The notes under the pieces: model-generated | Database searches by the model: none | Told to the model about the DNA's origin: nothing | What the model saw: the letters and a program-made list of their open reading frames with translations, nothing else | Shown here: positions 7,885-21,148 of the stretch, piece after piece | Numbering within the stretch: position 1 is the stretch's first letter | Layout: each line of letters begins with the position of its first letter | Translations under genes and position numbers: made by a program | Virus record (IMG/VR): IMGVR_UViG_3300034073_003340 | Coordinates: 1 to 64,000 of that record | Reading direction: 5' to 3' (one strand) | Length of the DNA: 64,000 nucleotides

Positions 7885-8319
7885 TCACCTTTTACCAGCT
7901 TGTCTGTAAAGTTGGCGTTCAGTCATGATACGAAACTTTATGCCATTGGATTTACACCAATTATAGGCAGCTTCCCACTTGGCTTCATTTAGCGTGATGG
8001 CATCAATATCCTTTTGCGTTCGAGCAGCTTCTGGGATGCTCTGACTCAAAGGTTTGATCTCAATTATCTCAGCGTGCTTGGCACCAGTTTTGTCGGTGTA
8101 AAGTATAAAGAAGTCTGGGATATAATTGCGAATCTTTCCAGTGAACGGATCCTGATACTGTATCTTAAGAGACTCGCTTGCCCATTGTTCAACATAAGGA
8201 TGTTGGTCGCATAGATTCATAAAGGTCAATTCCCAAGCGGACCTATATGTGATAGGAAGAGTCCCAACGTATTTTTCTGGGTTCTTGGGTTCAAACGTTC
8301 CTTGATTATAAAACGCCAT
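7885..8319 (-). CDS. Head completion nuclease (T4 gp4-like)
   Basis: F-x-PKNPEKY, YRSAWE, WASE, YIPDF and IEIKP motifs. Confidence 0.88.
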   Translation of the reverse strand: MAFYNQGTFEPKNPEKYVGTLPITYRSAWELTFMNLCDQHPYVEQWASESLKIQYQDPFTGKIRNYIPDFFILYTDKTGAKHAEIIEIKPLSQSIPEAARTQKDIDAITLNEAKWEAAYNWCKSNGIKFRIMTERQLYRQAGKR

Positions 8320-9383
8320 TAGAATAGCTTTCCAGGTCTACCAAACAAGGCACCTTTTAAAAGACCTTGGACACCCTGTCTGGCCGCTCCAGTATTACCA
8401 GAGACGATGTTTTTTAAACTAGATGCGGCAGTCTTACCAATAGCAAGACCTCTATTGGCATCATAAGATCCTGCTATTTCGCTGATAATACGACCAGGAC
8501 TACCGAAGCCTTGGCCGGTTATACCACTCAAGAGATTTCTCTGTAAGGTCGCACCAATGGTATCATCTAAACTACGGGTTATAGCATTTGGAGTTGTCGC
8601 CAGACCAGGAGTAATATCTAGATTTGGTAGATCGTTTGGAACGTCCCAATATTGACCAAAATCCAAACCAGCATCCTCAGCAATTTCCTGTGTTATGGGT
8701 TCGGGGTCAGCGTAAACTATTCCCTCAAAATCAATAGACATCTGAATTTCGTTGGTAACGGCACCAACGCTATAATCAAAATCGTCTGGGTTGAAGCTGG
8801 AGATCTTTGGATTGATCAGATCAAATCGTTCCATTACACCATTGTAGAATTGATACACCGAGATATGACTAAAGAAATAGGCGTAGTTCTGCTCTACCAT
8901 TGGGGGTAGAAAACCCCAGCGACCCAGTTCAAAGGACTCGCCAGTTACGATATCATAGACCGTTGATCCACTTGAACCTGCACCGTATATCTTACTATCA
9001 CCATAATAATATTGGTAATATTCAACAAACATATTTCGCAGATCCTGCGAAATGGTATCATGAAATCTAACCTGGAGCGGCTCAAAGTCATGACCGGTTT
9101 GAACAATACGTTTACGATTATACTGATTCAGCGTCTCTTGGCGAAAGGTAACTTTGGGTCGATCAATATTCTTGACAACTAGTCCAATTCCTCTTTCCCA
9201 TCCACTACCACCAGTAGACTCCGGGCGATAGAACTTCATCCAAAAAAGGAATTTGTTCTTGGGAACATTGGCGAATCTAGTTCCGCCCAAACCAAAATTG
9301 TTTGAAGCGTGATGGCTGTCCCCCAACATGAGGGACAGCCCATTAGGATCAGAAGTCCTACCGCCTCTTGAAGTTTCAGTCAC
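8319..9383 (-). CDS. Tail tube-like protein (baseplate tube initiator/gp54-like)
   Basis: PKVTFRQETLNQYNRKRIVQT...F-x-P-x-x-V-x-FHD tube-fold motif, directly downstream of the tail tube gene. Confidence 0.6.
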   Translation of the reverse strand: MTETSRGGRTSDPNGLSLMLGDSHHASNNFGLGGTRFANVPKNKFLFWMKFYRPESTGGSGWERGIGLVVKNIDRPKVTFRQETLNQYNRKRIVQTGHDFEPLQVRFHDTISQDLRNMFVEYYQYYYGDSKIYGAGSSGSTVYDIVTGESFELGRWGFLPPMVEQNYAYFFSHISVYQFYNGVMERFDLINPKISSFNPDDFDYSVGAVTNEIQMSIDFEGIVYADPEPITQEIAEDAGLDFGQYWDVPNDLPNLDITPGLATTPNAITRSLDDTIGATLQRNLLSGITGQGFGSPGRIISEIAGSYDANRGLAIGKTAASSLKNIVSGNTGAARQGVQGLLKGALFGRPGKLF

Positions 9384-9393
9384 TGACTAAACC

Positions 9394-10232
9394 TTATAGA
9401 CGGTTGCCAGGAATCTGCTCAGGAAGCGCGGTCATTAGACCGTTTGCCTGCGTTGCGTTATCAAAACGAACAGTCAACGTAATGGTCTGGAAACCGGATT
9501 CAGCATAGTCCAGATCCATGTAGTCAACGTTCTGTAGGAAGCAACCTTCAAGCGTCCATGTCTCAACGACAGTGTCATTGCCACCGTCCATGGTCTCAAT
9601 AATGGTTACAAACTTATAGTTGATACCAGAAGCAAAAGCCGTCTGCTCAAAGTGGTTGAGCTGCTTCTGTAACTGGTGCCCAACAAGCTTAGCAACGTTG
9701 TTGGTCAAGTCATCCTTGAGAACAATCTGCAAGGTCTCCCACGTATGCTTACCAGCATAGTAGGCGGTGCTGTTGTAACTATGAACAGGAACTTCTTCGT
9801 GGGCAATTTTTGGTTTGCCAACGCTCTGAACCTGCTGGGTGAAGTCGAGACCACCTGCGATTGGACCAAAGTTAACCACGCGGACGCGGAAGCGATACTT
9901 ATACTTGAGTTGGAGAAGACCACCGCGGCCCTGTCCGCCTCCAAGTGGAACCATTTGTATTCAATCAGTGTCGTTAATACTGATCCGCCTTACGGCTGCT
10001 CATTGTTACCAATGAGATTAGACTATATCATGACCCACTTGGGGCCCCACCCGTTTCAGCCCACTTGGGCCTACGACCTTTCGGTCTAGTCGTTGAACGT
10101 TCCGGTTCATAACTCCGGCTTCGCTGCTGATTGTCCCTGAGGGATTTTCCAGCAATTAGAGTGGTTTTTCGACCAGGATCACTCCTGGAAGCAGCTATTC
10201 CTTTAACCGAACTTAGATAGAGTTTCTGCCAT
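9394..10232 (-). CDS. Tail tube protein (T4 gp19-like), spliced: exon 1 10232-10206, exon 2 9951-9394 (194 aa)
   Basis: GGAGG RBS plus ATG GCA GAA ACT CTA TCT AAG TTC GGT (MAETLSKFG) joins in frame to GTT CCA CTT (VPLGGGQGRGGLLQ...KYRFRV). Also YYAGKHTW and W-x-L-x-GCF tube motifs. Confidence 0.92.
9952..10205 (-). mobile_element. Group I intron (subgroup IA-like, 254 nt, no internal ORF)
   Basis: P AATTGCTGGAAA, Q AATCAGCAG, R GTTCAACGACTA, S ATGATATAGTCT. Exon-terminal U pairs with G in P1 (CGGU|UA with UAGCUG). P10 GGAAU pairs with exon 2 GUUCC. P3 CCACTC/GGGTGG. P7.1 GACC-GAAA-GGTC and P7.2 GCCC-AAGT-GGGC. Terminal omega-G. Confidence 0.95.
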
Positions 10233-10329
10233 GACGATATCACCTCCTAGGTAACGATCTATTTTGATTATTTAGCGTTTCAGATTGTAAATAGAAACAA
10301 TTAGAAACTTTTAGAAGATTTGGAGTTCA

Positions 10330-11142
10330 ATGTATTACGTTTATACCTTGTGTGATCCAAGAAGAGATGACCAACCATTTTATGTTGGCAAGGGATCACG
10401 AGACCGATGTAAGTCCCATCTATATGAAACGTATCAGAATACGAGCAATCGCCGCAAGTGGTGTAAGATAGCTGCTATTAAGAAGTCCGGGCTTGAAGTT
10501 ACTATCAAAAAGATTCAAGAGGATTTATCAGAGTCTGATGCTTATGATCTGGAAGAAGAATTAATCAAGAAGTACGGTAGAATAGGCTATGAATCCAATG
10601 GCATCTTAACCAACATATGTGAATCTTCTCGTCCTCCCTCTGCTAAAGGAAGAATGATATCAGATGAAACTCGTAGAAAGCATAGTGAACGCCAAAAAGG
10701 TCCACTAAATCATAGATATGGTATCAAGATGTCAGATGAGGAAAAGGAATATAGGCGTCGATTTAATTTAGAAAATGGTATCAGACCGCCTGATAGGACA
10801 GGGGTTTCCCACACTGAAGAGACCAAAATCAAGATGAGTCTAGCCAGCAAAGGTAAGAAGAAAAGCCCTGAGCATTGTAAGGCGATTGGTGAAGCTCGTC
10901 GTGGAAAATCTCTAGGACCATGTTCCAATGAGAAAGCCAAGAAAATAGCAGAATCACAGTATAGAAACTATCAGCTTACTAGCCCTGAAGGTAAAAATTA
11001 CACAGTGAACACAAGTAAACTAAGAGAGATGATAAAGATATTCAATTGGTCATATGGGGGAATCATGGCAGCTAAAATTGCTGGGAGAAAATATCGAGGT
11101 TGGACTATTTTAGATCTGGGACGATCTAAAATACCAGATTAA
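10330..11142 (+). CDS. Free-standing GIY-YIG-type homing endonuclease with NUMOD3-like repeats
   Basis: YYVY...PFYVGKG...R...H catalytic module and basic GxxxSxETxxKxS repeats. Opposite strand to its neighbours. Confidence 0.85.
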   Translation: MYYVYTLCDPRRDDQPFYVGKGSRDRCKSHLYETYQNTSNRRKWCKIAAIKKSGLEVTIKKIQEDLSESDAYDLEEELIKKYGRIGYESNGILTNICESSRPPSAKGRMISDETRRKHSERQKGPLNHRYGIKMSDEEKEYRRRFNLENGIRPPDRTGVSHTEETKIKMSLASKGKKKSPEHCKAIGEARRGKSLGPCSNEKAKKIAESQYRNYQLTSPEGKNYTVNTSKLREMIKIFNWSYGGIMAAKIAGRKYRGWTILDLGRSKIPD

Positions 11143-12051: not shown

Positions 12052-12064
12052 ACATATATTTAGT

Positions 12065-12100
12065 CATGGAAATAGCCCCAGTTTCCCAGGACCATTCCTT
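12065..12100 (-). terminator. Hairpin following the stranded Ro60 3' end (probable original Ro60 terminator)
   Basis: AAT-GGTCCTGG-GAAA-CTGGGGCT-ATT on the minus strand, just after the stranded TAA at 12106. Confidence 0.5.
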
Positions 12101-12105
12101 TTGCC

Positions 12106-12150
12106 TTACTTGCTGAAGAAGTCCGACATGATCTGCGGAGCCGCAGTGTC
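12106..12150 (-). pseudogene. Stranded duplicate of the last 14 codons of Ro60 (DTAAPQIMSDFFSK*)
   Basis: Translates to DTAAPQIMSDFFSK*, versus the current Ro60 end SQDAPQVMSDFFSK*. Same length and recoded codons. Confidence 0.92.
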
Positions 12151-12464
12151 AATAGGCTTTAATCATTTTACCATTTATAGCCATATTTTCAGTTAAGCAA
12201 AAATCTGGATTATTTTTCTGAATCTCTTTCTTCAATTCATCAATTTGCTTCTCTAGAAGCTTGATATGATTTTTCAAAAAAGTGATATCTGATTGTTTTG
12301 CTGGATCGTTTAGCATAGTTTCTCCATTTATATTCTTTGTTTTAGCATAGCAAATATAAATGTATTTTTCAATAAATAGGAGTGGTAAGCCAGAGGGGTC
12401 GGATCCTCTGGCAACCTAGCTTGGAGCAAACAGGCTGTCCCACTTGATATTTATTGGAGCTCAT

Positions 12465-13337
12465 ATGAGTCAGATCTGCGACTATGGCTGTGGTCGTCTT
12501 GCCACAACATTCAAACCCTATTCTAAACGCTGGTGCTGTGAAACATCTCAGAACAAGTGTCCTGCAATCAAGACCAAGCAGAATACCCAACAGGCGATCG
12601 AAGCCCGTAAGCAAGGTGTGAGGAGCAAATACGGGGTAGATAACATCTCACAAATACAAGCCGTTAAGGACAAGAAGATCGCAACTTGCTTGAGCAATTA
12701 CGGTGTTGAGAATCCCAATCAATCTTCAATCATCCGTCAAAAAGCTGAAGCCACTAACCTAGATAGGTATGGTGGAACAAATCCTCGTCATTGTGACAAA
12801 GTTAAGGAGAAAGGACGTCAGACTTGTCTTGAACGTTACGGAGTAGATAACGGAAGCAAGACTGAGCAAGCCAAAACAAAAATATCATCACACAAGCTAG
12901 GTCTCACTGATCAGGAAAAGCTACAGATAGCCAAGAGAAGAGAAGAAACTTGTTTAGAACGCTACGGAGTGAGGAATGTATCTCAGAACGAGAAGATCCA
13001 TTACTCTAAGCTAGTCACGGCCAGGGCCAAAACCTACACCTTTCCCTCAGGACAAATAGCAACGGTACAAGGATATGAACCACAGGTTTTAGATTCGTTA
13101 TTAAAAGCCGGTATTAGAGAGCAGGATATCAAAGTTGGACGTCGCAACGTGCCAACTATTCGCTATCACTATGAGGGCAAGGACAGATTCTATTTTCCTG
13201 ATATCTATATAGCCAGTCACAACTGGATCATTGAGGTCAAGAGTCTTTTTACATTCCGACTTGAACGCGAGAAGAACATGGCAAAAAGAGTAGCCACCAA
13301 AGCTGATGGCTACTCCTTTAGTTTCGTGATACGGTGA
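12465..13337 (+). CDS. Free-standing PD-(D/E)xK endonuclease with N-terminal Cys cluster and five YGVxN repeats (homing-type)
   Basis: CDYGCG...CC...CP; KYGVDN/NYGVEN/RYGGTN/RYGVDN/RYGVRN; YFPDIYI...IIEVKS. GGAG RBS before ATG 12465. Confidence 0.75.
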   Translation: MSQICDYGCGRLATTFKPYSKRWCCETSQNKCPAIKTKQNTQQAIEARKQGVRSKYGVDNISQIQAVKDKKIATCLSNYGVENPNQSSIIRQKAEATNLDRYGGTNPRHCDKVKEKGRQTCLERYGVDNGSKTEQAKTKISSHKLGLTDQEKLQIAKRREETCLERYGVRNVSQNEKIHYSKLVTARAKTYTFPSGQIATVQGYEPQVLDSLLKAGIREQDIKVGRRNVPTIRYHYEGKDRFYFPDIYIASHNWIIEVKSLFTFRLEREKNMAKRVATKADGYSFSFVIR

Positions 13338-15080
13338 TTACTTCGAGAAGAAATCGCTCATCACCTGGGGAGCATCCTGGCTAAAGCCAACTACGTCCAA
13401 CATACCAGCGTCCTTGGGGTCCGCAATGGTACAGCTGGTCGCAGTCATACCAACCACAACAGACTTAGCAGGGATGCCAGTCTTCTGTCGGTAAGTCTTC
13501 AGAGCCTGAGAAGGAGCCTGACGACCCGCATAGGTCTCGTTGTCCGTGTAGACAGCGAAGTTCTCCACGGGCAGCTTGTTATCAAGCGCCCACTCAAAGG
13601 GTAGCGAGCAGTCCGTGTTACCGAACGGCAGGCCCGAGATCGTGTTGATCACGTCATCCAGTCGCTGACGCGGACTGATCTTCAGGATCGACACCGGACC
13701 AGCATCCTTGACGTTGGCGTTCATGCGACCTCCATAGCCGTAACCATAGCCGCTACGACCACTGCCACCAGTGAATCCAATGAACTCATAAGAGTTCTCG
13801 ACATTCGCCGTGATCAACGCCATAGCCGCCGAAGCGTCACGAGCAGTTAGTCCCGGAATGTTGCCGATGGCAGCACTGCCCATGGACCCCGACACGTCAA
13901 GAGCTAGCAGCGTATTCTTGCCGGTCGGGGCCACATTGCCAAACGAGGCATAAAATGCCTGGTCGAGCGAGTCTACAACGCCGCGAACGACGTTCCAGGA
14001 CAGACTACCCTTGAAACCACGACCCTGACCGTAGGTCTTCATCGCAGCAAGGATAGCAATTGGGTGAACACGAGCCTTGCGAAGAGCCTCACCATCGGAA
14101 AGCTTGGCCTTGACCAGCTTCTCGGCGGCAGACATCGGAGTCAGAAGACCAACACTTGACATCTTGCCCAGGTTACGAATCATCGCAGTCAGCGACATGT
14201 TGGTCAGCAAAGCCTCCCAAACATTGGCATCGTTAAGGAACTGAGTGGGAATCGCCTCACGAGGAAGGTTGTGATCCACAATCAGCTGGATGATCTCCTT
14301 GGCAGAAGTTGCCTTCTTTGCCGCCTCAAATGCGAGAATCTGAGGGTGGAGAACACCAGACACGTCAGAACGGGACAGGCGAACCTCGCTTTCAAGATTT
14401 GCCGAGCCACGAACGTAGTCCGTAGCACCAACATTCGACATTCCACCAACCATCCAACGCAGGACAGCATCACGCGCAACATCGTCCGTCTTGGGGTGAC
14501 CCAGACGAAGCATGTCACGGTGCGACCATCCATCGCGCTGCTGATACTTGATCGCCTGGTTAGCCAGCCGGTCAAGTGGCATCTCTAGATACCAGTTACC
14601 TACTGCTCGACGTAGAGCGCGCCCCCAACCGCGAACGCCGTCCACAAAGGCAGCAAAGTGGAACAGATGGGTTCCAATCCGAGCGACCTTGGGTAGAGCG
14701 TCAAGAGCAGCCTTACGAGTTGCCTCGCTGTCAGCTGCCGATGCTAGAGCCAGAACGAATAGAGCAGGGTCGTTCTTGGGAGCGCGGCCAGAGTCACTGA
14801 TCTCTACCACACGATTTACAACGCGGATGCCATCCTCGTCAATTAGACGCAGGACGTTCTGAGCATTGGACTTGGTCAGCTCGCGCTCACCCACATAGTA
14901 GGTTCCACCCTCGGTTCCGAGGATCAGGAAGCGATCAAGCTGATCCCATGGAGAAACCACGAAGGTGAATCCACCGGCGTTATTCTTGGCCATTTCCGAC
15001 TCACGGCCCGGAATGGGCTGAGTCTGCGGCGTCTGCTTGGAAGCAATGGCACCCATCAGGACGTTCTTGGAATTACTCAT
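13338..15080 (-). CDS. rsr: Ro60/TROVE-vWA RNA-binding protein (Rsr)
   Basis: NNAGGFTF, LDRFLILGTEGGTYY, IKYQQRDGWSHRD, ALDVSGSM (MIDAS), VYTDNET and GMLDVVGF. GAGGAG RBS before ATG 15080. Confidence 0.95.
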   Translation of the reverse strand: MSNSKNVLMGAIASKQTPQTQPIPGRESEMAKNNAGGFTFVVSPWDQLDRFLILGTEGGTYYVGERELTKSNAQNVLRLIDEDGIRVVNRVVEISDSGRAPKNDPALFVLALASAADSEATRKAALDALPKVARIGTHLFHFAAFVDGVRGWGRALRRAVGNWYLEMPLDRLANQAIKYQQRDGWSHRDMLRLGHPKTDDVARDAVLRWMVGGMSNVGATDYVRGSANLESEVRLSRSDVSGVLHPQILAFEAAKKATSAKEIIQLIVDHNLPREAIPTQFLNDANVWEALLTNMSLTAMIRNLGKMSSVGLLTPMSAAEKLVKAKLSDGEALRKARVHPIAILAAMKTYGQGRGFKGSLSWNVVRGVVDSLDQAFYASFGNVAPTGKNTLLALDVSGSMGSAAIGNIPGLTARDASAAMALITANVENSYEFIGFTGGSGRSGYGYGYGGRMNANVKDAGPVSILKISPRQRLDDVINTISGLPFGNTDCSLPFEWALDNKLPVENFAVYTDNETYAGRQAPSQALKTYRQKTGIPAKSVVVGMTATSCTIADPKDAGMLDVVGFSQDAPQVMSDFFSK

Positions 15081-15097
15081 GATCTGTACTCCTCTTT

Positions 15098-15252
15098 TCG
15101 GCTCGTGAAACCCACGAGCAAGGTTGGCCTCTGACATCAAGGCCGGTAGTTCGATCTAGGGAGTGGGGTGACGGCCACTCGGCTCACAGCTTACGCTGTG
15201 ATTGAGAAACGGACGGTTTTCTATAGAAACACAAAGCGGACGGGCTTTGTGA
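15098..15252 (-). ncRNA. Structured RNA immediately upstream of rsr (leader or Y-RNA-like candidate)
   Basis: Six consecutive hairpins in about 155 nt. Three have CCGUC-containing loops and one has a GUAA tetraloop. Confidence 0.5.
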
Positions 15253-15259
15253 TAATGCC

Positions 15260-15562
15260 TTATAACTGGGCTTGGTTTGCCTCGTCAAGAGTCTTTTTTA
15301 GAACTTCTAGCACTTCTGCCTTGCTTCCAAAAATACCACTCATTGAGACTGGATTTGTAATAGCAACATGGATTACCGTCGGACTAAAAAATCTGATGAT
15401 TCCATAGCCTTCAAATCGACCGTTTCCAGGCTTGCGATTGTTCCATCTGGTTCGATACTTACCGCCCACACTGTAGACGTCATATCTATAATTGTTTTCG
15501 ATGCCCAGCAAATCTGAGACATCCTGGTAGAACTTTTCTACCTCACTGATTTCCTTTTCCAT
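15260..15562 (-). CDS. Phage hypothetical protein
   Basis: 100 aa ORF (RWNNRKPGNGRF motif) with TTGACA-N17-TTAAAT directly upstream. Confidence 0.7.
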   Translation of the reverse strand: MEKEISEVEKFYQDVSDLLGIENNYRYDVYSVGGKYRTRWNNRKPGNGRFEGYGIIRFFSPTVIHVAITNPVSMSGIFGSKAEVLEVLKKTLDEANQAQL

Positions 15563-15604
15563 ACTCTATTTAAGCATAGATTTGGAATCTTGTCAACTCA
15601 ATGG

Positions 15605-16425
15605 TTGTCGGGTAGCACGAACTCTACCCGACGAGGCTCCACCACCATATAGGTATTGGATAAAAGTAAAGGTCTCGTTCGTGAGACCACCCCTGCGTCA
15701 TCAACAACATGGCACTTTGGACCGCAAGGTCCGAAGAGCAAGTAACGAGGTGGACCGGGCTAGTGTATTGAGATCGAAATCTTAATACCTATATCTCCCT
15801 AAGCAGACCGAAGCCTGTTTCCATGTTGTTGAGTCAGCGTGTTAGGTTACTTTCTAGTAAGATAACCCACCATCATCGGCTCTCGATCTATTTATTTGGG
15901 GGTCTCCGGAGACCGAAGTCTCCGGAGGGCAAGTTGACTAGGTCTTTCCAGCGCCAACTTGCGGGGCTTGATAAATCAGATACTTGGTCTGATCACACCT
16001 ACTGAGTCCTATGCCTTTCAGACCCAACGCGTCTAGGGGAAGTTACTCAAGGCCCCCATGTTTCCGATCAAGGTAGTTAAGGAGGAACCAAATCTAGGCC
16101 TTATGACCGAAGCCCGCCTATCCTCTTTATTCGTTTTAATAGCGTTGGTGACACTATTTAAACTACTAAACCTCACCGTCGCACGCTAGGATGAGGGTGA
16201 GGGGTGATCCTTCCCTCAACATAACTACCATGTGGGACCGAAATCCCAGATCACTAGGGACACTCGCAAGCGCCCCGTCGCACTTTACCAGGTCGATTCC
16301 TGGACTTTTGTTCTCCTCCGGTGCCGTCCGGCAGATACCTTTATGTGTCAGCACACACCCCAGTCGCCAAGAACAAAATATATGGGTTCAAGAGCCTAGG
16401 CTCCTCCGTGCCGTTTAACCGTTGT
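15605..16425 (-). ncRNA. Large structured non-coding region, possibly three tandem ~250-280 nt RNAs
   Basis: No credible ORF. Five UUCG-capped hairpins, G-U pairs that only work on the minus strand, a 12-bp and an 11-bp long-range helix in pseudoknot order, and internal TAAATA motifs at 16155-16160 and 15889-15894. Confidence 0.7.
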
Positions 16426-16464
16426 ATATTAGATCCTTTTGAATCGCAATATTCTATTCATGGA

Positions 16465-16492
16465 AATGGAGAGAGTTTTACCTCTCTCCATT
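16465..16492 (-). terminator. Hairpin terminator after tail sheath
   Basis: AATGGAGAGAG / CTCTCTCCATT 11-bp stem just after the sheath stop. Confidence 0.7.
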
Positions 16493-16495
16493 CTC

Positions 16496-18910
16496 TTAGT
16501 TAAACAGAGCGCCTAAATCATCACCGGTGGCAACAATGCGAACCGGAATATAGATGAATTCAATTGCCTGAACTGGCTGGATAGCAATATCTACCCATAG
16601 TTCCTGGCGATCAATTCGCTCTGGTGTGTTGTTGGTTTCATCACAAACCACAATGAAGTCGTAAAGACCACGTAGACCTACTAGATCTGCTAGAAAACGC
16701 TCAAAGGTCGTTCTCACAGAATCTCGAGTCTGGAAGTCGTTTGGTTCAAAGAGGAACGGCTTGCTGATGTTATCCAAGTTGTAACGTAGGTAATTGACCA
16801 AACGAGCAACGTTGATGCGATCAAGAGCTGTTTCTAGGCTGTGACGAGTCTTCTGCCCATATACCACCAAACCACGATTTGGAATAAACGCGATTGGGTT
16901 GATCTTATTGGAATACAGAATATCACGCTGACCAGGGTTCAAGATAGCAGCCTTGAATTCACCCTCATCATCAAGATATCCAACGCTAGAGGCATTGTTA
17001 ACAAGACCACGAGTGAAACCAGCAGGAGCCATCCAAGGGTAGCTGATGCTATCATTGTAAGCCAGAGTTCTAAGAGCAATCGTCGACGGTGGGACCATGA
17101 TCTCGTTACCATCAACATTGGTGCTCAGACCCCATGGATAATACATACCAACATATGGGTTGAAAGTGCTGACACCATTTTCAGTGTTACCATTTCCAGC
17201 ATTGTTGGCAAACTCTGTGATTGCCGCGCCAGTTGGCTTCAAGCGGATTGGAGTGTCACCTACAATAAATGCCACTTCCTTCATGTCCGTGTTCAAAGTA
17301 ACCATCTCATCGATTAGTTCAATGTAACCAGGAGCAGCCAGGAGGTTAAAGTAAACCGTTTCTGCACGGATGTCTTCATTTGCGGAAATCGTTGCCGCAA
17401 GCGAGCGGACAATCATCTGACGCTGCGCACGACGTCCAAAGAACGGAACACCATTTGTCTGGAAGCCAGAAACGTTTGACCACTTGCCTTCAGAAGCATT
17501 GTATTGCTTGACGTCGTTGGTAGACGCAGCAAGATCAAACAACTTCATACCTTCAGCATAGTTGAGTGACTCGGTAGTTTCAGCTTCACCAAACGCAATA
17601 CCGTCAATTGGGTCAATGTTGTTTTCAACATTAATAACCTTCCACAAGCCACCGGTTCGACGATACATCTTTGGATAATTTTCCAAATCCGAAGTATCAA
17701 CCCAAAGATCGTTTTCGACCAGTGGAGCACCAGTGGACTGAACCGTTGGTGCCGATCCCAGCAGGATCACACCGTTGGCATCAGTTGCTGGATAAACTGT
17801 GCGGTATGGACGCCATTCTCCGCCTTGGTTAACCTTGACGTTTACTACTAGATTCTGGTTATTGAACCAGAGAGTTCCATCATCGGCTGTGTTGGTTGGC
17901 TCAGTCGCACTAGCTTCTTCCCCAAGAGCTTCCCAAACATCAGTATTTTCGTTATAACGAAGGAACTCAAAAACCGCACGAGTATCTTCATAACTCAAGA
18001 ATACTGAACCAGCAACTCTAGTTAGAGTGTTGACCTTTGACAAGCTGTAGATAGGAACTAGGGTTTCTGCCCAAATGCCAGTTCCGGCATTATAGGTTTT
18101 TAGAAGCCAGGTCGCTGCCGCACTAATGCTGGTAATAACATCAGGGGTATTGAGAACTAGAACGTCGCCAATGTTTCCAGTAGCAGGACGGAAATTGTTG
18201 TATTTTAGTTCCAGAGAAGCCGAAGATCCTTCAGCAACCTTAGCTGTCTTCCATTCTGGTGTTCCTACAACAAACCATTCGTCGGCAATACGCTGATAAA
18301 GAACCTTCTTTGAATACAACACTACCATGGCAAAATCACCATTGGCAGAATCTACCAGAAGAGGAACTTTCTGTCCAGGAATGATTTCAGGAGCCGCGCT
18401 ATCAAGAGAAGACTCATCTTCTACGATCCAAAGATCGCGCTCAGTCCATTCACTACCAGTATATTCGTAAATACCCCAGGTATTGTTTTGCGTATCTAGC
18501 CAGTTCGTGCCATTGGTAGCTTCGGCACGAGGCTCAGAAGCCTGTGGCATCAGCTGCCCATAGTCGATCGCAGCACGAATGACAAACGCACGGTTAGCAA
18601 TACCAAGATACTGGTAAGCAGCATGAAGACCATACTCGTTTAGTTCGTAACCATGAACGGCAGAGCCATTTCTGGTGTAAAAAATTGGGTTGCCAAACGT
18701 CTGGAGGAGTTCGCGCTGGCTCGTGATAGGGTAGAGCTTGTTCGCGTTCTCGGGCAAGGTGCCTTCGGCCACGCCGCTACCCGAAGGCAGAGACTTGAAT
18801 TCGTGCGTGCCGATAATAATCAGCGGAACAGTGCCTTCACCAGCCGTTGCGTAGTTGGATTCGTCGGTTACGGTAACAGATGTACCGGGCGACACTAGAG
18901 GATATACCAT
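16496..18910 (-). CDS. Tail sheath protein (T4 gp18-like)
   Basis: LVSPGTSVTVTDES N-terminus; YPWMAPAGFTRG, INPI, RINVARL, FLFEPND and PVQAIEFIYIP. Confidence 0.95.
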   Translation of the reverse strand: MVYPLVSPGTSVTVTDESNYATAGEGTVPLIIIGTHEFKSLPSGSGVAEGTLPENANKLYPITSQRELLQTFGNPIFYTRNGSAVHGYELNEYGLHAAYQYLGIANRAFVIRAAIDYGQLMPQASEPRAEATNGTNWLDTQNNTWGIYEYTGSEWTERDLWIVEDESSLDSAAPEIIPGQKVPLLVDSANGDFAMVVLYSKKVLYQRIADEWFVVGTPEWKTAKVAEGSSASLELKYNNFRPATGNIGDVLVLNTPDVITSISAAATWLLKTYNAGTGIWAETLVPIYSLSKVNTLTRVAGSVFLSYEDTRAVFEFLRYNENTDVWEALGEEASATEPTNTADDGTLWFNNQNLVVNVKVNQGGEWRPYRTVYPATDANGVILLGSAPTVQSTGAPLVENDLWVDTSDLENYPKMYRRTGGLWKVINVENNIDPIDGIAFGEAETTESLNYAEGMKLFDLAASTNDVKQYNASEGKWSNVSGFQTNGVPFFGRRAQRQMIVRSLAATISANEDIRAETVYFNLLAAPGYIELIDEMVTLNTDMKEVAFIVGDTPIRLKPTGAAITEFANNAGNGNTENGVSTFNPYVGMYYPWGLSTNVDGNEIMVPPSTIALRTLAYNDSISYPWMAPAGFTRGLVNNASSVGYLDDEGEFKAAILNPGQRDILYSNKINPIAFIPNRGLVVYGQKTRHSLETALDRINVARLVNYLRYNLDNISKPFLFEPNDFQTRDSVRTTFERFLADLVGLRGLYDFIVVCDETNNTPERIDRQELWVDIAIQPVQAIEFIYIPVRIVATGDDLGALFN

Positions 18911-19024
18911 AAACCAGCCCCTTTTGCAATCGGTGGATTTCGTTACCAGTATTTATCCAGCGCGCAGAAAGGTAGCGGTATTAAGTGCTAGGAGAACCTA
19001 ACCTAAATTTAGACTATAGTCAGA

Positions 19025-19627
19025 TTAATCTTTTATCCAACCAAATAGGTTGCGAATCGCCCATTTACCAGCATTGTTTAGGTCACGGGTTCCAATACCT
19101 GCCCATATACCCGAGGGCTTAGGTGGAGCATCAATTGGTTTCCATCCACCAATCCATTGAAACCATTGTTCTTTGCTTTGGTCGAAAACATAACAAGGGA
19201 TAGGTTCAAACTGAGCAAGTTTTTCGTGGCGATCCAAGAACATCTGAACCGCCCAGCCTGTCCCACCATCAACAAGATTACGAGCGTTGATCGTTGATAC
19301 CGCGTAAACAGCTTCAGCCCACTGAACTTGATACCAGTTGCGTCTCAGAAGGGATTTGACGTTATGAGATCGTTTGCCTGGCCAAGGACGCTTGATCGTC
19401 TTACTGGCCCTGAGAAGTGCTGAATCAGCCTTCTCTAGTTGCTCTTGGGAGAGGACTACAATCTCTTGTTTGGGCGCGTCACTACGGTGCTTTTCAAAGG
19501 ACCAATGGATAACGCTTTGCCCGTCGCGCCCAGCATTCATACCCCACTGTAGATCAGAACCAATTGCCCCACCACTTAGACAAATGTTTCCAGTCAGGGC
19601 TTCAAAAAGTGATTCTTCAGTAGACAT
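19025..19627 (-). CDS. SLOG/DprA-like nucleotide-binding protein
   Basis: CLSGGAIGSD, LLRRN-x-x-QV, DGGTGWAV and WAGIGTR motifs. Confidence 0.6.
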   Translation of the reverse strand: MSTEESLFEALTGNICLSGGAIGSDLQWGMNAGRDGQSVIHWSFEKHRSDAPKQEIVVLSQEQLEKADSALLRASKTIKRPWPGKRSHNVKSLLRRNWYQVQWAEAVYAVSTINARNLVDGGTGWAVQMFLDRHEKLAQFEPIPCYVFDQSKEQWFQWIGGWKPIDAPPKPSGIWAGIGTRDLNNAGKWAIRNLFGWIKD

Positions 19628-20256
19628 TGTGTTTTACCATATAGATCTTGAATGGTCCCGTCATTGTCTATAACGGGCGCAGGTTCCCCTAGCCATGCCC
19701 ATTCAGATACATGGACGGTGGGATGCGAAATAGCCATAGCTGAACGAACGGGACTATCATCAAGGGCAGTTTTCAACGCCAGATCAAACCATTCAGGCTC
19801 TGGTCCTCTTTTTACTCTGAAGAGGAGACCATTGTATTGACGGATCAAAGCACATTCATTTGGAAAGCGACAATCAGTTACTACCACTCTCTCTTTGCCA
19901 CGTAGCCGAGACTCCAAGCTTTTGATCCAGAGATTGTTGTCAAAATGCTCACGCATTACATCAGTTCCAATTACCTGCATTGCCGTTCTTGGAGTGAATC
20001 GGCCTAGGTAATTGTAAGGGCTTTCATGCCAGTTAAGCTTTTGTTCCCACCATTCATCCGGGGTCTCTCGCCAGGTTCTACTATCAGTGGTGTTGCCTTC
20101 TAATAGCGCACGATCCCAGCCAAATACAGCAGCCAGCAAGTCTTTTAGAGGGTTAGCAAAGCTTTCTACTTCAAATCCATGCTCACGAACGAGATATTCA
20201 CCCGCCGTATCTTTTCCTGATCCTTTGAAGCCAAGGATTCCTACAACTTGAATCAT
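19594..20256 (-). CDS. Deoxynucleoside monophosphate kinase (T4 gp1-like)
   Basis: GFKGSGKDT P-loop, SFANPLKD, TPR-x-x-MQ-x-x-GT and VTDCRFPNE. Confidence 0.92.
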   Translation of the reverse strand: MIQVVGILGFKGSGKDTAGEYLVREHGFEVESFANPLKDLLAAVFGWDRALLEGNTTDSRTWRETPDEWWEQKLNWHESPYNYLGRFTPRTAMQVIGTDVMREHFDNNLWIKSLESRLRGKERVVVTDCRFPNECALIRQYNGLLFRVKRGPEPEWFDLALKTALDDSPVRSAMAISHPTVHVSEWAWLGEPAPVIDNDGTIQDLYGKTQCLLKNHFLKP

Positions 20257-20313
20257 ATTCTCACCTGTTTATTTTAGGTGAGAATAACAGATCAAACTAC
20301 ATAGTGTCAGTAT

Positions 20314-20667
20314 TCAGGTGGGAAGAAACTCTTTGAGGCGCGCAATGGCTTCAAGATGAATGGGAACAATATAGACTCTACCAATACCAATGGGATCGGC
20401 AGGAATTTTCAATTCCTCGATAAGAGCATGGATTTCATCGGGATCGAAGGCGTGGCCCGCTTCGAGTTTTTCAATCATCCCTGCGGCTCGAATCTGAATC
20501 TCCGGTTGATTTTCAAACTTTCGAACGTGATGAGGCTGACCATCTAAGATGATCTCACCCTCTAGAGGTCCCAGACCATCGTTGATAGGAATAGCGTAGA
20601 TCCCTCCAAGTCGGCGAACCAACGAGGAGGGATCATACCATTCAGGAGTCGCATAGGGATCAGTCAT
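20314..20667 (-). CDS. Hypothetical protein
   Basis: ATG 20667 overlaps the upstream gene stop; 117 aa. Confidence 0.6.
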   Translation of the reverse strand: MTDPYATPEWYDPSSLVRRLGGIYAIPINDGLGPLEGEIILDGQPHHVRKFENQPEIQIRAAGMIEKLEAGHAFDPDEIHALIEELKIPADPIGIGRVYIVPIHLEAIARLKEFLPT

Positions 20668-21148
20668 TGGGGTAAAGGCCAAAGCGAGCCAACAGGATCG
20701 CCAGTTCAGCCTTGTCACCGAACACATAGGCAGTGGTCACTTCCTTGCGGAAGCATACCATCTTACCCGGAGGACCATATACCGGCGGCATCGTATGAAC
20801 CGAGGCGTCCATGAACTGGACGATTTCCTTGTCCACCAAGTAGGGATACGTGGGGTCGACCACCAGGTCAGCAACAAAGCCCAGCTTCTTGGCAGCGTCG
20901 ACCACTGACGTAATAGTCGTGATATCCAGCTGGTTCTTATCACCCAGTGCGATCGTGGTTCCGAAACCGCCGGCGCTGTTGTGCCAGGTCATGATGTCCG
21001 CATTGGGCTCTTCGCCCTTACTCAAGGGCATCACAACTTCACGCCACGTCATCTGGTTGCCGGCGTGCATCGCATGGGCAATTGCCTTCCCGGCACCCAG
21101 GCTGGGCAGGTCAGTGCGGATCAAACAATATCCGATCAAATCAGGCAT
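20660..21148 (-). CDS. Peptidyl-tRNA hydrolase type 2 (PTH2)-like protein
   Basis: YCLIRTDLPSLGAGKAIAHAMHA matches the PTH2 R-x-DL...GK...Q/H-x-x-HA motif. GGAG RBS. Confidence 0.6.
   Translation of the reverse strand: MPDLIGYCLIRTDLPSLGAGKAIAHAMHAGNQMTWREVVMPLSKGEEPNADIMTWHNSAGGFGTTIALGDKNQLDITTITSVVDAAKKLGFVADLVVDPTYPYLVDKEIVQFMDASVHTMPPVYGPPGKMVCFRKEVTTAYVFGDKAELAILLARFGLYPND

What the first reader, a model, noticed from the sequence alone, without database searches (positions are those of the whole stretch)
12065..13400. Endonuclease cassette replaced the 3' end of Ro60, leaving the original 14 codons and terminator stranded
Seen: the current Ro60 ends GF|SQDAPQVMSDFFSK* and abuts the endonuclease stop (13337/13338). 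About 1.2 kb downstream lies DTAAPQIMSDFFSK* with different codons, followed by a hairpin. Established: GFD-x-x-x-P is the usual Ro60 C-terminal motif, so the stranded copy looks ancestral. Inference: a PD-(D/E)xK homing endonuclease targets the conserved Ro60 GF|D codons and carries a recoded, resistant gene end. This also implies Ro60 is under strong selection.
Basis: partly seen in the sequence, partly recalled or inferred. Interest (0 to 1): 0.7.

Follow-up and report, generated by a model that had tools for sequence, protein, structure and literature searches.

The report
Homing-endonuclease cassette replacing Ro60's gene end
A selfish nuclease gene has lodged at the very end of a jumbo phage's Ro60 gene, bringing its own copy of the last 14 codons so that Ro60 stays intact. 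The original end is left behind as a dead relic, a trick known from fungal mitochondria that I could not find reported for phages.

Summary
Ro60 (minus strand, 13338-15080) ends GF|SQDAPQVMSDFFSK* and its stop abuts the stop of a convergent 290-aa nuclease gene (12465-13337). A second, out-of-context copy, DTAAPQIMSDFFSK* (12106-12150), lies 1.2 kb downstream and is followed by a conserved hairpin.

Eight nuclease-free relatives end in GFD...FFSK* or close variants and carry one copy only. The stranded copy is 48/48 nt identical to the working end of a near-identical relative (L002).

The nuclease (Pfam DUF7487) has an N-terminal Cys cluster (probable zinc finger), helical YGV repeats and a C-terminal PD-(D/E)xK domain. 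The invariant residues are E205, D246, E257 and K259. TnsA, Vsr and I-Bth0305I match at Z 7-9.

Comparative evidence points to homing:
- Two sister pairs are polymorphic for the gene.
- Nuclease-free alleles occur in runs of the same study.
- SNPs cluster in the flanks, as expected of co-conversion tracts.
- Nuclease alleles are saturated at synonymous sites while their flanks are not.
- Seven nuclease-carrying lineages were found, two of them with a different, HNH-like nuclease sharing the same Cys-cluster N-terminus, and in one of them also the 5' leader.

The cut site and the resistance of the replaced end are inferred, not shown. The closest analogue is the fungal mitochondrial mORF "C-terminal replacement" element. 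I class this as a new variant of a known kind.

The parts
13338..15080 (-). Ro60 gene (580 aa, TROVE + Ro60-type vWA domains). It is the only copy in the 436-kb genome.
   Evidence: Pfam TROVE E 1.7e-40 and vWA_Ro60 E 1.1e-52, with the profile matched to position 164 of 165, i.e. into the replaced end. The ATG at 15080 has an AGAGGAG ribosome-binding site. dN/dS is 0.03-0.08 against relatives.
13338..13383 (-). Cassette-borne replacement end of Ro60: the last 14 codons (SQDAPQVMSDFFSK) plus the stop, and the third base of the Phe codon (TTT here; TTC in all nuclease-free alleles).
   Evidence: Identity to L002 is 100% up to the Phe codon and then breaks down. The codon pattern AGY-GAT-TTC-TTC-TCN is shared with the cassette ends of L049 and L050 but not with the native ends of this clade.
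12465..13337 (+). Free-standing homing-endonuclease gene, 290 aa (Pfam DUF7487). It has an N-terminal Cys cluster (probable zinc finger, aa 5-33), five helical YGV-x-N repeats (aa ~40-185) and a PD-(D/E)xK nuclease domain (aa 187-290, nt ~13023-13334).
   Evidence: PF24308 E 2.7e-67. PHROG 'homing endonuclease' families match. E205, D246, E257 and K259 are invariant in 50 homologues. The AF2 model has pLDDT 93. TnsA matches at Z 9.1, Vsr at 7.2 and I-Bth0305I at 7.0 over residues 187-290. The gene is single-copy in the genome.
12369..12464 (+). Conserved promoter-like box (AATAAATAGG) and 5' leader of the nuclease gene, with an 8-bp-stem hairpin at 12389-12412 and a GGAG ribosome-binding site.
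   Evidence: It is more conserved than the coding region across six loci, and five stem pairs show compensatory changes. Homology between the window and L049 starts exactly at 12369.
12149..12316 (-). Lineage-specific 'cargo slot': an AT-rich segment with an orphan 55-aa ORF (GGAG ribosome-binding site). Its TGA stop overlaps the first two bases of the stranded Ro60 end.
   Evidence: There are no real homologues among 1.8 billion representatives and no Pfam or PHROG hit. Other lineages carry different ORFs at this position: 106, 139, 169 (a complete YfbU domain) and 138 aa.
12106..12150 (-). Stranded native Ro60 end (DTAAPQIMSDFFSK plus stop), not translated as part of any gene.
   Evidence: It is 48/48 nt identical to the working end of L002 and identical to those of L003 and L004. 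The same relic is shorter or absent in other nuclease-carrying lineages.
12061..12098 (-). Native post-Ro60 hairpin (12069-12098) plus a TTCCATGACTA motif, now separated from Ro60 by 1.2 kb.
   Evidence: Fold at -19.5 kcal/mol. It is conserved, with varied but still paired stems, directly after the Ro60 stop in the relatives aligned; L089 shows none. There is no U-run. A similar element follows the sheath gene at 16449-16492.
13384..14650 (-). Probable co-conversion tract: the part of Ro60 next to the cassette that is about 2.4% diverged from L002.
   Evidence: There are 30 SNPs in 13467-14643, against 4 SNPs in 14750-19500. The same pattern is seen in L049 versus L003.

Best explanation
This is a mobile homing-endonuclease cassette that occupies the 3' end of the phage Ro60 gene.

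The core cassette (about 12369-13383) has three parts: its own promoter and leader, a free-standing nuclease gene read towards Ro60, and a substitute copy of the last 14 Ro60 codons.

Proposed mechanism:
1. When a cassette-carrying phage and a cassette-free relative infect the same cell, the nuclease cuts the cassette-free Ro60 allele in or near its last ~60 nt, around GGY-TTC-GAY (inferred).
2. The break is repaired from the cassette-carrying genome. This copies the cassette together with flanking Ro60 sequence (shown as SNP-dense tracts).
3. The carrier's own allele is safe because the site is interrupted and diverged (inferred).
4. Because the cassette brings an in-frame gene end, Ro60 stays full length and functional (shown: complete domain match, low dN/dS).
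5. The native end and its hairpin are left downstream as an untranslated relic that erodes with time (shown across lineages). The relic may also serve as right-hand homology for repair (inferred).

Between the nuclease promoter and the relic lies a slot that holds a different small gene in each lineage.
For: The relic is of the native type: it is 48/48 nt identical to L002's working end, and eight nuclease-free relatives have a single end of this type.

The nuclease has a PD-(D/E)xK motif and fold and hits PHROG homing-endonuclease families. Other DUF7487 genes sit beside or inside ligase genes, as free-standing homing genes do.

Cassette presence is polymorphic between near-identical genomes: window versus L002, and L049 versus L003, whose flanks are 98.4-98.8% identical. 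Nuclease-free alleles also turn up in the same study's runs. One contig joins 13387 directly to 12150 at depth 480, against 11-25 for the cassette.

SNPs cluster next to the cassette: 30 in 1.27 kb, then 4 in 4.75 kb.

Between the window and L049 the nuclease genes are saturated at synonymous sites (pS 0.82), while Ro60 and its neighbours are at 0.40-0.53. The nuclease alleles therefore did not descend together with their flanks.

The cassette sits at the same place in at least seven lineages: window, L049, L050, L055, L008, L089/L090 and probably L051. In five of them the nuclease stop lies 0-17 nt from the Ro60 stop: adjacent in the window, L049 and L050, and 13-17 nt away in L008 and L089. 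In L055 the two stops are separated by about one codon.

All six nuclease-linked alleles examined have TTT (or TGG) at the Phe codon and GAT at the Asp codon. Eight of eight nuclease-free alleles have TTC, and seven of eight have GAC.

No intact ancestral junction exists anywhere in the genome.
Against: There is no biochemical evidence that the protein cuts DNA, or where.

The left edge of the exchanged tract is not fixed. It lies at the Phe codon here and about 13 nt upstream in L049, so the GF|D point may be an insertion point rather than the cut site.

The window differs from L002 over a whole ~5-kb block that also contains a GIY-YIG homing gene and a group I intron. Which nuclease drove that particular exchange cannot be told.

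Gain versus loss is inferred from parsimony, not rooted.

Nuclease-free alleles are far more abundant in some samples, so the element is not sweeping there.
Confidence: 0.8

Rival explanations
1. The nuclease is not a homing enzyme. It is an ordinary accessory gene (for example a defence or anti-defence nuclease) sitting in a recombination hot spot downstream of Ro60, and the duplicated gene end is a scar of illegitimate recombination.
For: The region between Ro60 and the tail-tube gene is highly mosaic and holds different genes in every lineage. No cleavage data exist. The family is an uncharacterised DUF.
Against: Two different nuclease types sit in the same convergent position within 0-17 nt of the Ro60 stop in at least five lineages; in L055 the two stops are about one codon apart, and each brings an in-frame Ro60 end. 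Synonymous markers in that end track nuclease presence. SNP tracts start at the cassette. PHROG homing-endonuclease families match.
Confidence: 0.1
2. The neighbouring GIY-YIG endonuclease and group I intron (9952-11142) are the active drivers, and the DUF7487 cassette is merely co-converted along with them.
For: The block that differs between the window and L002 runs from inside Ro60 to exactly the intron's 3' splice site at 9951. A second SNP-dense tract lies in the tube gene.
Against: L050 and L008 carry the Ro60 cassette without any GIY-YIG gene nearby. L003 carries a region homologous to the window's GIY-YIG gene and intron (~80% identity) without the Ro60 cassette. This reading does not explain why a substitute Ro60 end is always present. 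It may still hold for the single window/L002 exchange.
Confidence: 0.07
3. Local tandem duplication of the Ro60 end within this lineage, followed by divergence in place and later insertion of a nuclease gene between the copies. No transfer of a foreign gene end is involved.
For: The two copies are clearly homologous, and the last seven residues are identical.
Against: The working copy differs at 10 of 36 nt, including two Ser codon-family switches, while the rest of Ro60 differs from L002 by under 2.5%. Its codon pattern matches cassette ends of distant lineages and native ends of the L007/L051 type. The relic, not the working copy, matches the close relatives.
Confidence: 0.03

Closest known systems
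Fungal mitochondrial mobile endonuclease ORFs (mORFs) that create 'gene hybrids': Allomyces macrogynus atp6; Glomus sp. atp6, atp9, cox2, nad3; Rhizopus atp9; Mortierella cox2 (PMC3630166)
   Same: The layout matches: an inserted foreign C-terminal coding piece in frame with the host gene, then an endonuclease gene, then the displaced native C-terminus downstream. The native piece is (near-)identical to that of the closest element-free relative. The inserted piece is well conserved as protein but diverged as DNA.
   Different: The host is a 436-kb phage, not an organelle, and the target is Ro60. The nuclease is a PD-(D/E)xK/DUF7487 enzyme (or HNH-like in two lineages) rather than LAGLIDADG or GIY-YIG. 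It is encoded on the opposite strand with its own promoter, not fused in phase. There is also an extra variable cargo slot.
Free-standing phage homing endonucleases with 'intronless homing' and co-conversion of flanking markers (T4 seg and mob genes; my own knowledge; general discussion in PMC10448857)
   Same: The gene is free-standing and sits next to a conserved gene. It is present or absent among close relatives, exchanged tracts flank it, and nuclease genes lie at recombination boundaries.
   Different: Those elements sit between genes and leave no duplicated gene end. Here the insertion point lies inside the coding sequence and is compensated by a carried gene end.
Homing-endonuclease insertion that splits a gene into working pieces (Aeromonas phage Aeh1 mobE in nrdA; my own knowledge)
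   Same: A free-standing nuclease gene lies inside a conserved phage gene without an intron or intein. A DUF7487 relative does exactly this to an NAD-dependent ligase gene (L087).
   Different: Here the downstream piece is not used. It is replaced by a carried copy and left to decay.
PD-(D/E)xK and EDxHD homing endonucleases (I-Ssp6803I; I-Bth0305I, PDB 3r3p); families listed in PMC6083498
   Same: The catalytic domain has a restriction-endonuclease-like fold. I-Bth0305I matches at Z 7.0 and Vsr at Z 7.2.
   Different: There is no sequence-level match to any solved structure. The active-site signature is E...PD...ExK, not EDxHD. The DNA-binding part (Cys cluster plus YGV repeats) is different. 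The gene is free-standing, not intron- or intein-encoded.

Membership tests
PD-(D/E)xK nuclease superfamily | Catalytic signature E/D ... (P)D ... (D/E)xK, conserved across homologues | tested here: met
   E205, D246 (in FPDIY), E257 and K259 (in EVK) are invariant in an alignment of 50 homologues of 32-74% identity.
PD-(D/E)xK nuclease superfamily | Restriction-endonuclease-like alpha/beta core fold | tested here: met
   AF2 model with pLDDT 93. Residues 187-290 align to TnsA at Z 9.1, Vsr at 7.2, I-Bth0305I at 7.0 and Hjc at about 5. Foldseek E-values for the whole protein were weak (at or above 0.02), but almost all hits were PD-(D/E)xK nucleases.
Homing endonuclease gene (functional class) | Site-specific cleavage of the element-free allele | not testable with these tools
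   This needs an enzyme assay.
Homing endonuclease gene (functional class) | Presence/absence polymorphism at one fixed site among close relatives | tested here: met
   Window versus L002, L049 versus L003 and L008 versus L011. An element-free junction contig occurs in a run of the same study.
Homing endonuclease gene (functional class) | History of the nuclease gene discordant with that of its host gene; co-conversion tracts in the flanks | tested here: met
   pS is 0.82 for the nuclease against 0.40-0.53 for the flanks, window versus L049. SNP clusters abut the cassette in two independent pairs.
Homing endonuclease gene (functional class) | Carrier allele lacks an intact target | tested here: inconclusive
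   The ancestral junction is absent from the whole genome at up to 3 mismatches in 23 nt, and the carried end is diverged. However, the real recognition site is unknown.
mORF-type C-terminal replacement ('gene hybrid') | Carried C-terminal piece in frame with the host gene, completing the protein | tested here: met
   Ro60 is 580 aa with no stops. The vWA_Ro60 profile is matched to position 164 of 165, reaching nt 13350.
mORF-type C-terminal replacement ('gene hybrid') | Displaced native C-terminus downstream, matching element-free relatives better than the carried one does | tested here: met
   48/48 nt to L002, against 26/36 between the two copies in the window.
mORF-type C-terminal replacement ('gene hybrid') | Endonuclease ORF on the same strand, often fused in phase with the host gene | tested here: not met
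   The nuclease gene is on the opposite strand, convergent with Ro60, and has its own promoter-like box and leader.
Ro60/TROVE ribonucleoprotein | TROVE plus vWA domains | tested here: met
   Pfam E 1.7e-40 and 1.1e-52.
Ro60/TROVE ribonucleoprotein | Partner Y RNA encoded nearby | tested here: inconclusive
   There is no Rfam hit at E<=1 in 15050-16520 and no tRNA-like gene. A conserved structured ~95-nt island at about 15800-15890 is a candidate only.

The most novel reading that the evidence does not exclude
DUF7487 is a large, uncharacterised family of free-standing PD-(D/E)xK homing endonucleases. More than 2,000 homologues were found, in phages and giant viruses.

In a clade of jumbo phages, the Ro60 3' end is a homing hot spot contested by two nuclease classes, PD-(D/E)xK and HNH-like. 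Both share one Cys-cluster recognition module, and in one HNH-like lineage (L089/L090) also the structured 5' leader. This would imply catalytic-domain swapping on a common targeting chassis.

The cassette also acts as a shuttle. By carrying a spare gene end and a variable cargo slot (YfbU, DUF4238 and orphan genes), it moves accessory genes between phages without damaging the invaded gene.
Probability: 0.4. Interest if true: 0.72.

Novelty: new variant of a known kind. Interest (0 to 1): 0.6.

Why it matters
It shows that the 'bring your own gene end' strategy, described so far for endonuclease ORFs in fungal mitochondria, also operates in large phages, and with a different, uncharacterised nuclease family.

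It gives DUF7487 a concrete, testable function and a candidate target: the last ~60 nt of Ro60.

It offers a natural example of two nuclease classes sharing one N-terminal module at one site, which is of interest for engineering modular nucleases.

It provides indirect but strong evidence that phage Ro60 is worth keeping. Every one of the six invaded lineages in which Ro60 could be read has preserved a full-length gene.

It also warns annotators that short, perfectly conserved 'gene tails' downstream of nuclease genes are relics, not genes.

Tried and rejected
- A DNA search of GenBank phages found only distant Ro60 genes of actinophages and no relative of the locus.
- A sequence search of the PDB with the nuclease found nothing.
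- A literature search for DUF7487 found nothing. Three searches for a phage example of a duplicated gene end next to a homing gene found only organelle cases.
- I tested whether the cargo ORFs are 3'-truncated pieces of donor genes. This was rejected for L051, whose YfbU domain is complete (1-164 of 166). It is undecidable for the window's 55-aa ORF, which is an orphan.
- A protein-DNA complex prediction of the nuclease on the ancestral junction was not folded by the tool. It is no evidence either way.
- A structure prediction of the second, HNH-like nuclease was too poor to use (pLDDT 52). Its class rests on the HLDH...NLQ...N motif and a weak PHROG Endo VII hit.
- Rfam and ARAGORN searches for a Y RNA near Ro60 found nothing.
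- The sigma-70 and terminator consensus scans gave nothing above chance in the region.
- Simple 'clean insertion into an L002-like genome' was rejected as the history of this particular genome, because 1.3 kb of flanking Ro60 and the whole downstream block also differ.
Full report
**Setting**

The window is the first 64 kb of a 435,856-bp virus record with direct terminal repeats, a jumbo phage from a metagenome.

The region of interest lies between the tail-sheath gene (16496-18910, minus strand) and a tail-tube gene (PHROG tail tube E 2.3e-58). Ro60 is markedly G+C-richer (52-60%) than its surroundings (about 30-46%).

Ro60 (13338-15080, minus strand; TROVE and Ro60-type vWA domains) ends ...DVVGF-SQDAPQVMSDFFSK*. 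Its stop (13338-13340) touches the stop (13335-13337) of a convergent gene at 12465-13337.

On the Ro60 strand, 1.2 kb further on, the peptide DTAAPQIMSDFFSK* is encoded at 12106-12150. In-frame stops just upstream show it is not part of a gene.

The two copies share 10 of 14 residues. They differ at 10 of the 36 nt of the 11 shared C-terminal codons plus the stop, and both serine codons have switched between the AGC and TCG families.

A 13-bp hairpin follows at 12069-12098.

**The stranded copy is the native end**

A search of viral contigs with Ro60 returned 45 loci. Eight nuclease-free relatives from the same phage clade were examined at DNA level (L002 to L007, L009, L011).
- They end GFD-x-x-AP-x-[IVL]-[ML]-[SA]-DFF-x-x*.
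- They carry a single copy of that end.
- They have no nuclease gene after it.

L002 is essentially the same genome as the window: 98.5% identity over 7.7 kb and 99.65% over 5.2 kb. Its working Ro60 end plus 3 nt is 48/48 identical to the window's stranded copy.

The window is identical to L002 up to the Phe codon and then diverges abruptly. The inserted material is therefore 12151-13382 (1,232 nt), between GGC-TT(C) and GAC-ACT.

The hairpin after the stranded copy is the signal that directly follows the Ro60 stop in the relatives aligned, L089 excepted. Its stem sequence differs from lineage to lineage but stays paired, and a conserved TTCCATGAC motif follows. It has no U-run, so I call it a conserved post-gene hairpin rather than a proven terminator.

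**The inserted gene is a PD-(D/E)xK nuclease of an uncharacterised family**

It matches Pfam DUF7487 (E 2.7e-67) and PHROG families annotated as homing endonucleases. More than 2,000 homologues exist in metagenomes.

In 50 homologues the residues E205, D246, E257 and K259 are invariant.

A confident model (pLDDT 93) shows three parts: a small N-terminal Cys-cluster module (probable zinc finger), five helical YGV-x-N repeats and a C-terminal alpha/beta domain. The C-terminal domain aligns with TnsA (Z 9.1), Vsr (7.2), the I-Bth0305I homing endonuclease (7.0) and Hjc. Weaker Foldseek hits are almost all PD-(D/E)xK nucleases.

No solved structure matches by sequence, and no paper mentions the family.

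Other family members sit where free-standing homing genes typically sit:
- one lies antisense inside an NAD-dependent ligase gene, splitting it (L087);
- two lie after an ATP-dependent ligase gene;
- one lies after an RNA ligase gene.

**Comparative evidence for mobility**

1. *Same site, many lineages.* Homologues of 64-74% identity lie in the same convergent position next to the Ro60 stop in L049, L050 and L055; the stops are adjacent in L049 and L050 and about one codon apart in L055. One probably does so in L051, where the contig ends.

2. *Sister pairs.* On a Ro60 tree, window/L002 and L049/L003 are two separate, strongly supported sister pairs, each with one carrier and one non-carrier. 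L049 and L003 are 98.4-98.8% identical in both flanks.

3. *Discordant history.* Between the window and L049 the nuclease genes are saturated at synonymous sites (pS 0.82). Ro60 and its neighbours stand at 0.40-0.53. The two nuclease alleles are therefore older than the split of their host genomes and entered separately.

4. *Exchanged tracts.* Against L002 there are 30 SNPs in the 1.27 kb of Ro60 next to the cassette and only 4 in the following 4.75 kb. L049 versus L003 shows the same pattern over about 2 kb.

5. *Coexistence.* In one run of the same study, a contig at depth 480 joins 13387 directly to 12150 through GGT-TTC-GAC, i.e. a cassette-free allele. Cassette contigs there have depth 11-25. 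In two other runs the cassette form stands at depth 54-67.

**The substitute gene end travels with the nuclease**

All six nuclease-linked alleles examined have TTT (TGG in L050) at the Phe codon and GAT at the Asp codon. Eight of eight nuclease-free alleles have TTC, and seven of eight have GAC.

The window's substitute end uses the AGC...TCG serine codons that are native to the L007 and L051 lineages. It is best read as the natural end of a diverged Ro60 that was captured with the nuclease, not as a purpose-made recoding.

The intact ancestral junction is absent from the whole genome.

Ro60 remains complete. The vWA profile is matched into the substitute end, and dN/dS is 0.03-0.08.

**The relic decays, and there is a cargo slot**

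The stranded end has a different length in each lineage:

| Lineage | Stranded end |
|---|---|
| window | 45 nt |
| L051 | about 30 nt |
| L008 | 27 nt |
| L049 | 24 nt, with one replacement |
| L050, L089 | none |

Between the nuclease promoter and the relic, each lineage has a different ORF on the Ro60 strand: 55, 106, 139, 169 or 138 aa. The 169-aa one is a complete YfbU domain. The window's 55-aa ORF is an orphan.

In the window, L049 and L051 the ORF's TGA stop overlaps the first bases of the relic. In L008 the ORF's end overlaps the start of the relic.

In L049 the relic and hairpin are of the L002 type, not the type of its sister L003. There they arrived with the cassette.

**A second nuclease at the same site**

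In L008 and L089/L090 a 235-236-aa gene occupies the same convergent position, 13-17 nt from the Ro60 stop.
- It shares the N-terminal Cys cluster with the window's enzyme (47% over 36 residues).
- In L089/L090 it also shares the promoter-like box and 5' leader.
- Its C-terminus carries an HLDH...NLQ...N motif, with only a weak PHROG Endo VII hit.
- Its structure could not be modelled, so the nuclease class is an inference.

L008 has the full architecture: substitute end, nuclease, 138-aa ORF, relic identical to the native L009 end, then hairpin.

**History of this genome**

The window differs from L002 across one block, from inside Ro60 (about 14650) to the tube gene (about 9400). Besides the cassette, this block holds a 302-aa ORF, a GIY-YIG homing gene and a group I intron, all of which L002 lacks.

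The insertion that first created the duplicated end therefore predates this exchange. Which of the two nucleases drove the last exchange cannot be decided.

**Comparison with what is known**

The architecture matches the mobile endonuclease ORFs of fungal mitochondria. These insert a foreign C-terminal piece plus an endonuclease gene and leave the native C-terminus downstream. Examples are Allomyces atp6 and Glomus atp6, atp9, cox2 and nad3 (PMC3630166).

The differences here are:
- the host is a phage;
- the target is Ro60;
- the nuclease belongs to a different family;
- the nuclease is antisense, with its own promoter;
- there is a cargo slot.

I found no phage example in the held literature. 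That library is incomplete, so I rate this a new variant of a known kind.

**What remains unproven**

The enzyme's activity, its cut site and the resistance of the substitute end are all untested.

Noticed in passing
window 9952-10204 (intron), 10205-10231 (exon 1), 9394-9951 (exon 2), 10330-11142 (+): The tail-tube gene is interrupted after codon 9 (MAETLSKFG|VPLGGG) by a 253-nt ORF-less group I intron (Rfam RF00028, 85 bits). A free-standing GIY-YIG/NUMOD3 endonuclease gene lies about 100 bp upstream on the opposite strand, a layout like 'collaborative homing'. The near-identical relative L002 has the uninterrupted gene and lacks the endonuclease.
   Followed up: partly
window ~15800-15890, minus strand: A conserved ~95-nt non-coding island lies upstream of Ro60 and is shared with L003, L005, L006 and L007. 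It has a long bulged stem and a UUCG-type hairpin. There is no Rfam or tRNA hit. It is a candidate Y-RNA-like partner of Ro60, untested.
   Followed up: partly
window 12389-12412; L049 4923-4946: The hairpin in the nuclease gene's 5' leader keeps its stem through compensatory changes. Its 8-nt loop is reverse-complemented between lineages: GGTCGGAT in the window and L051, ATCCGACC in L049, L050 and L089. This is a small hairpin-mediated inversion.
   Followed up: partly
L008 5162-5872 (-); L089 1106-1813 (+): A second, HNH-like nuclease occupies the same spot after Ro60. It has the same N-terminal Cys cluster and, in L089, the same 5' leader as the DUF7487 enzyme. This suggests exchange of catalytic domains on a shared N-terminal module.
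   Followed up: partly
L087 3020-6302: A DUF7487 homologue lies antisense inside an NAD-dependent DNA ligase gene. It separates the adenylation/OB part (414 aa) from the BRCT part (312 aa), giving a 'gene in pieces' arrangement.
   Followed up: no
window 12061-12098 and 16449-16492: The hairpin plus TTCCATGA(C/A)TA motif that follows Ro60 in relatives also follows the sheath gene. It may be a phage-specific end-of-gene or promoter signal.
   Followed up: no
window 19500-21080 and 8296-8334: Two further SNP-dense patches against L002 lie in otherwise almost identical sequence: about 4% divergence over 1.6 kb, and 6 SNPs in 40 nt. They suggest other recent recombination patches.
   Followed up: no
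window 13300-15200: Ro60 is a compositional outlier at 52-60% G+C, against about 30-46% in the flanking genes. This fits a foreign origin of the gene in this phage clade.
   Followed up: no
L002 7699-7743, L003 7690-7734, L004 1696-1740: The native 45-nt Ro60 end is identical in L002, L003 and L004, although L003 and L004 differ from the window's gene, to which L002 is 98.6% identical, by 14-19% at the DNA level. This mild excess of conservation is unexplained.
   Followed up: no
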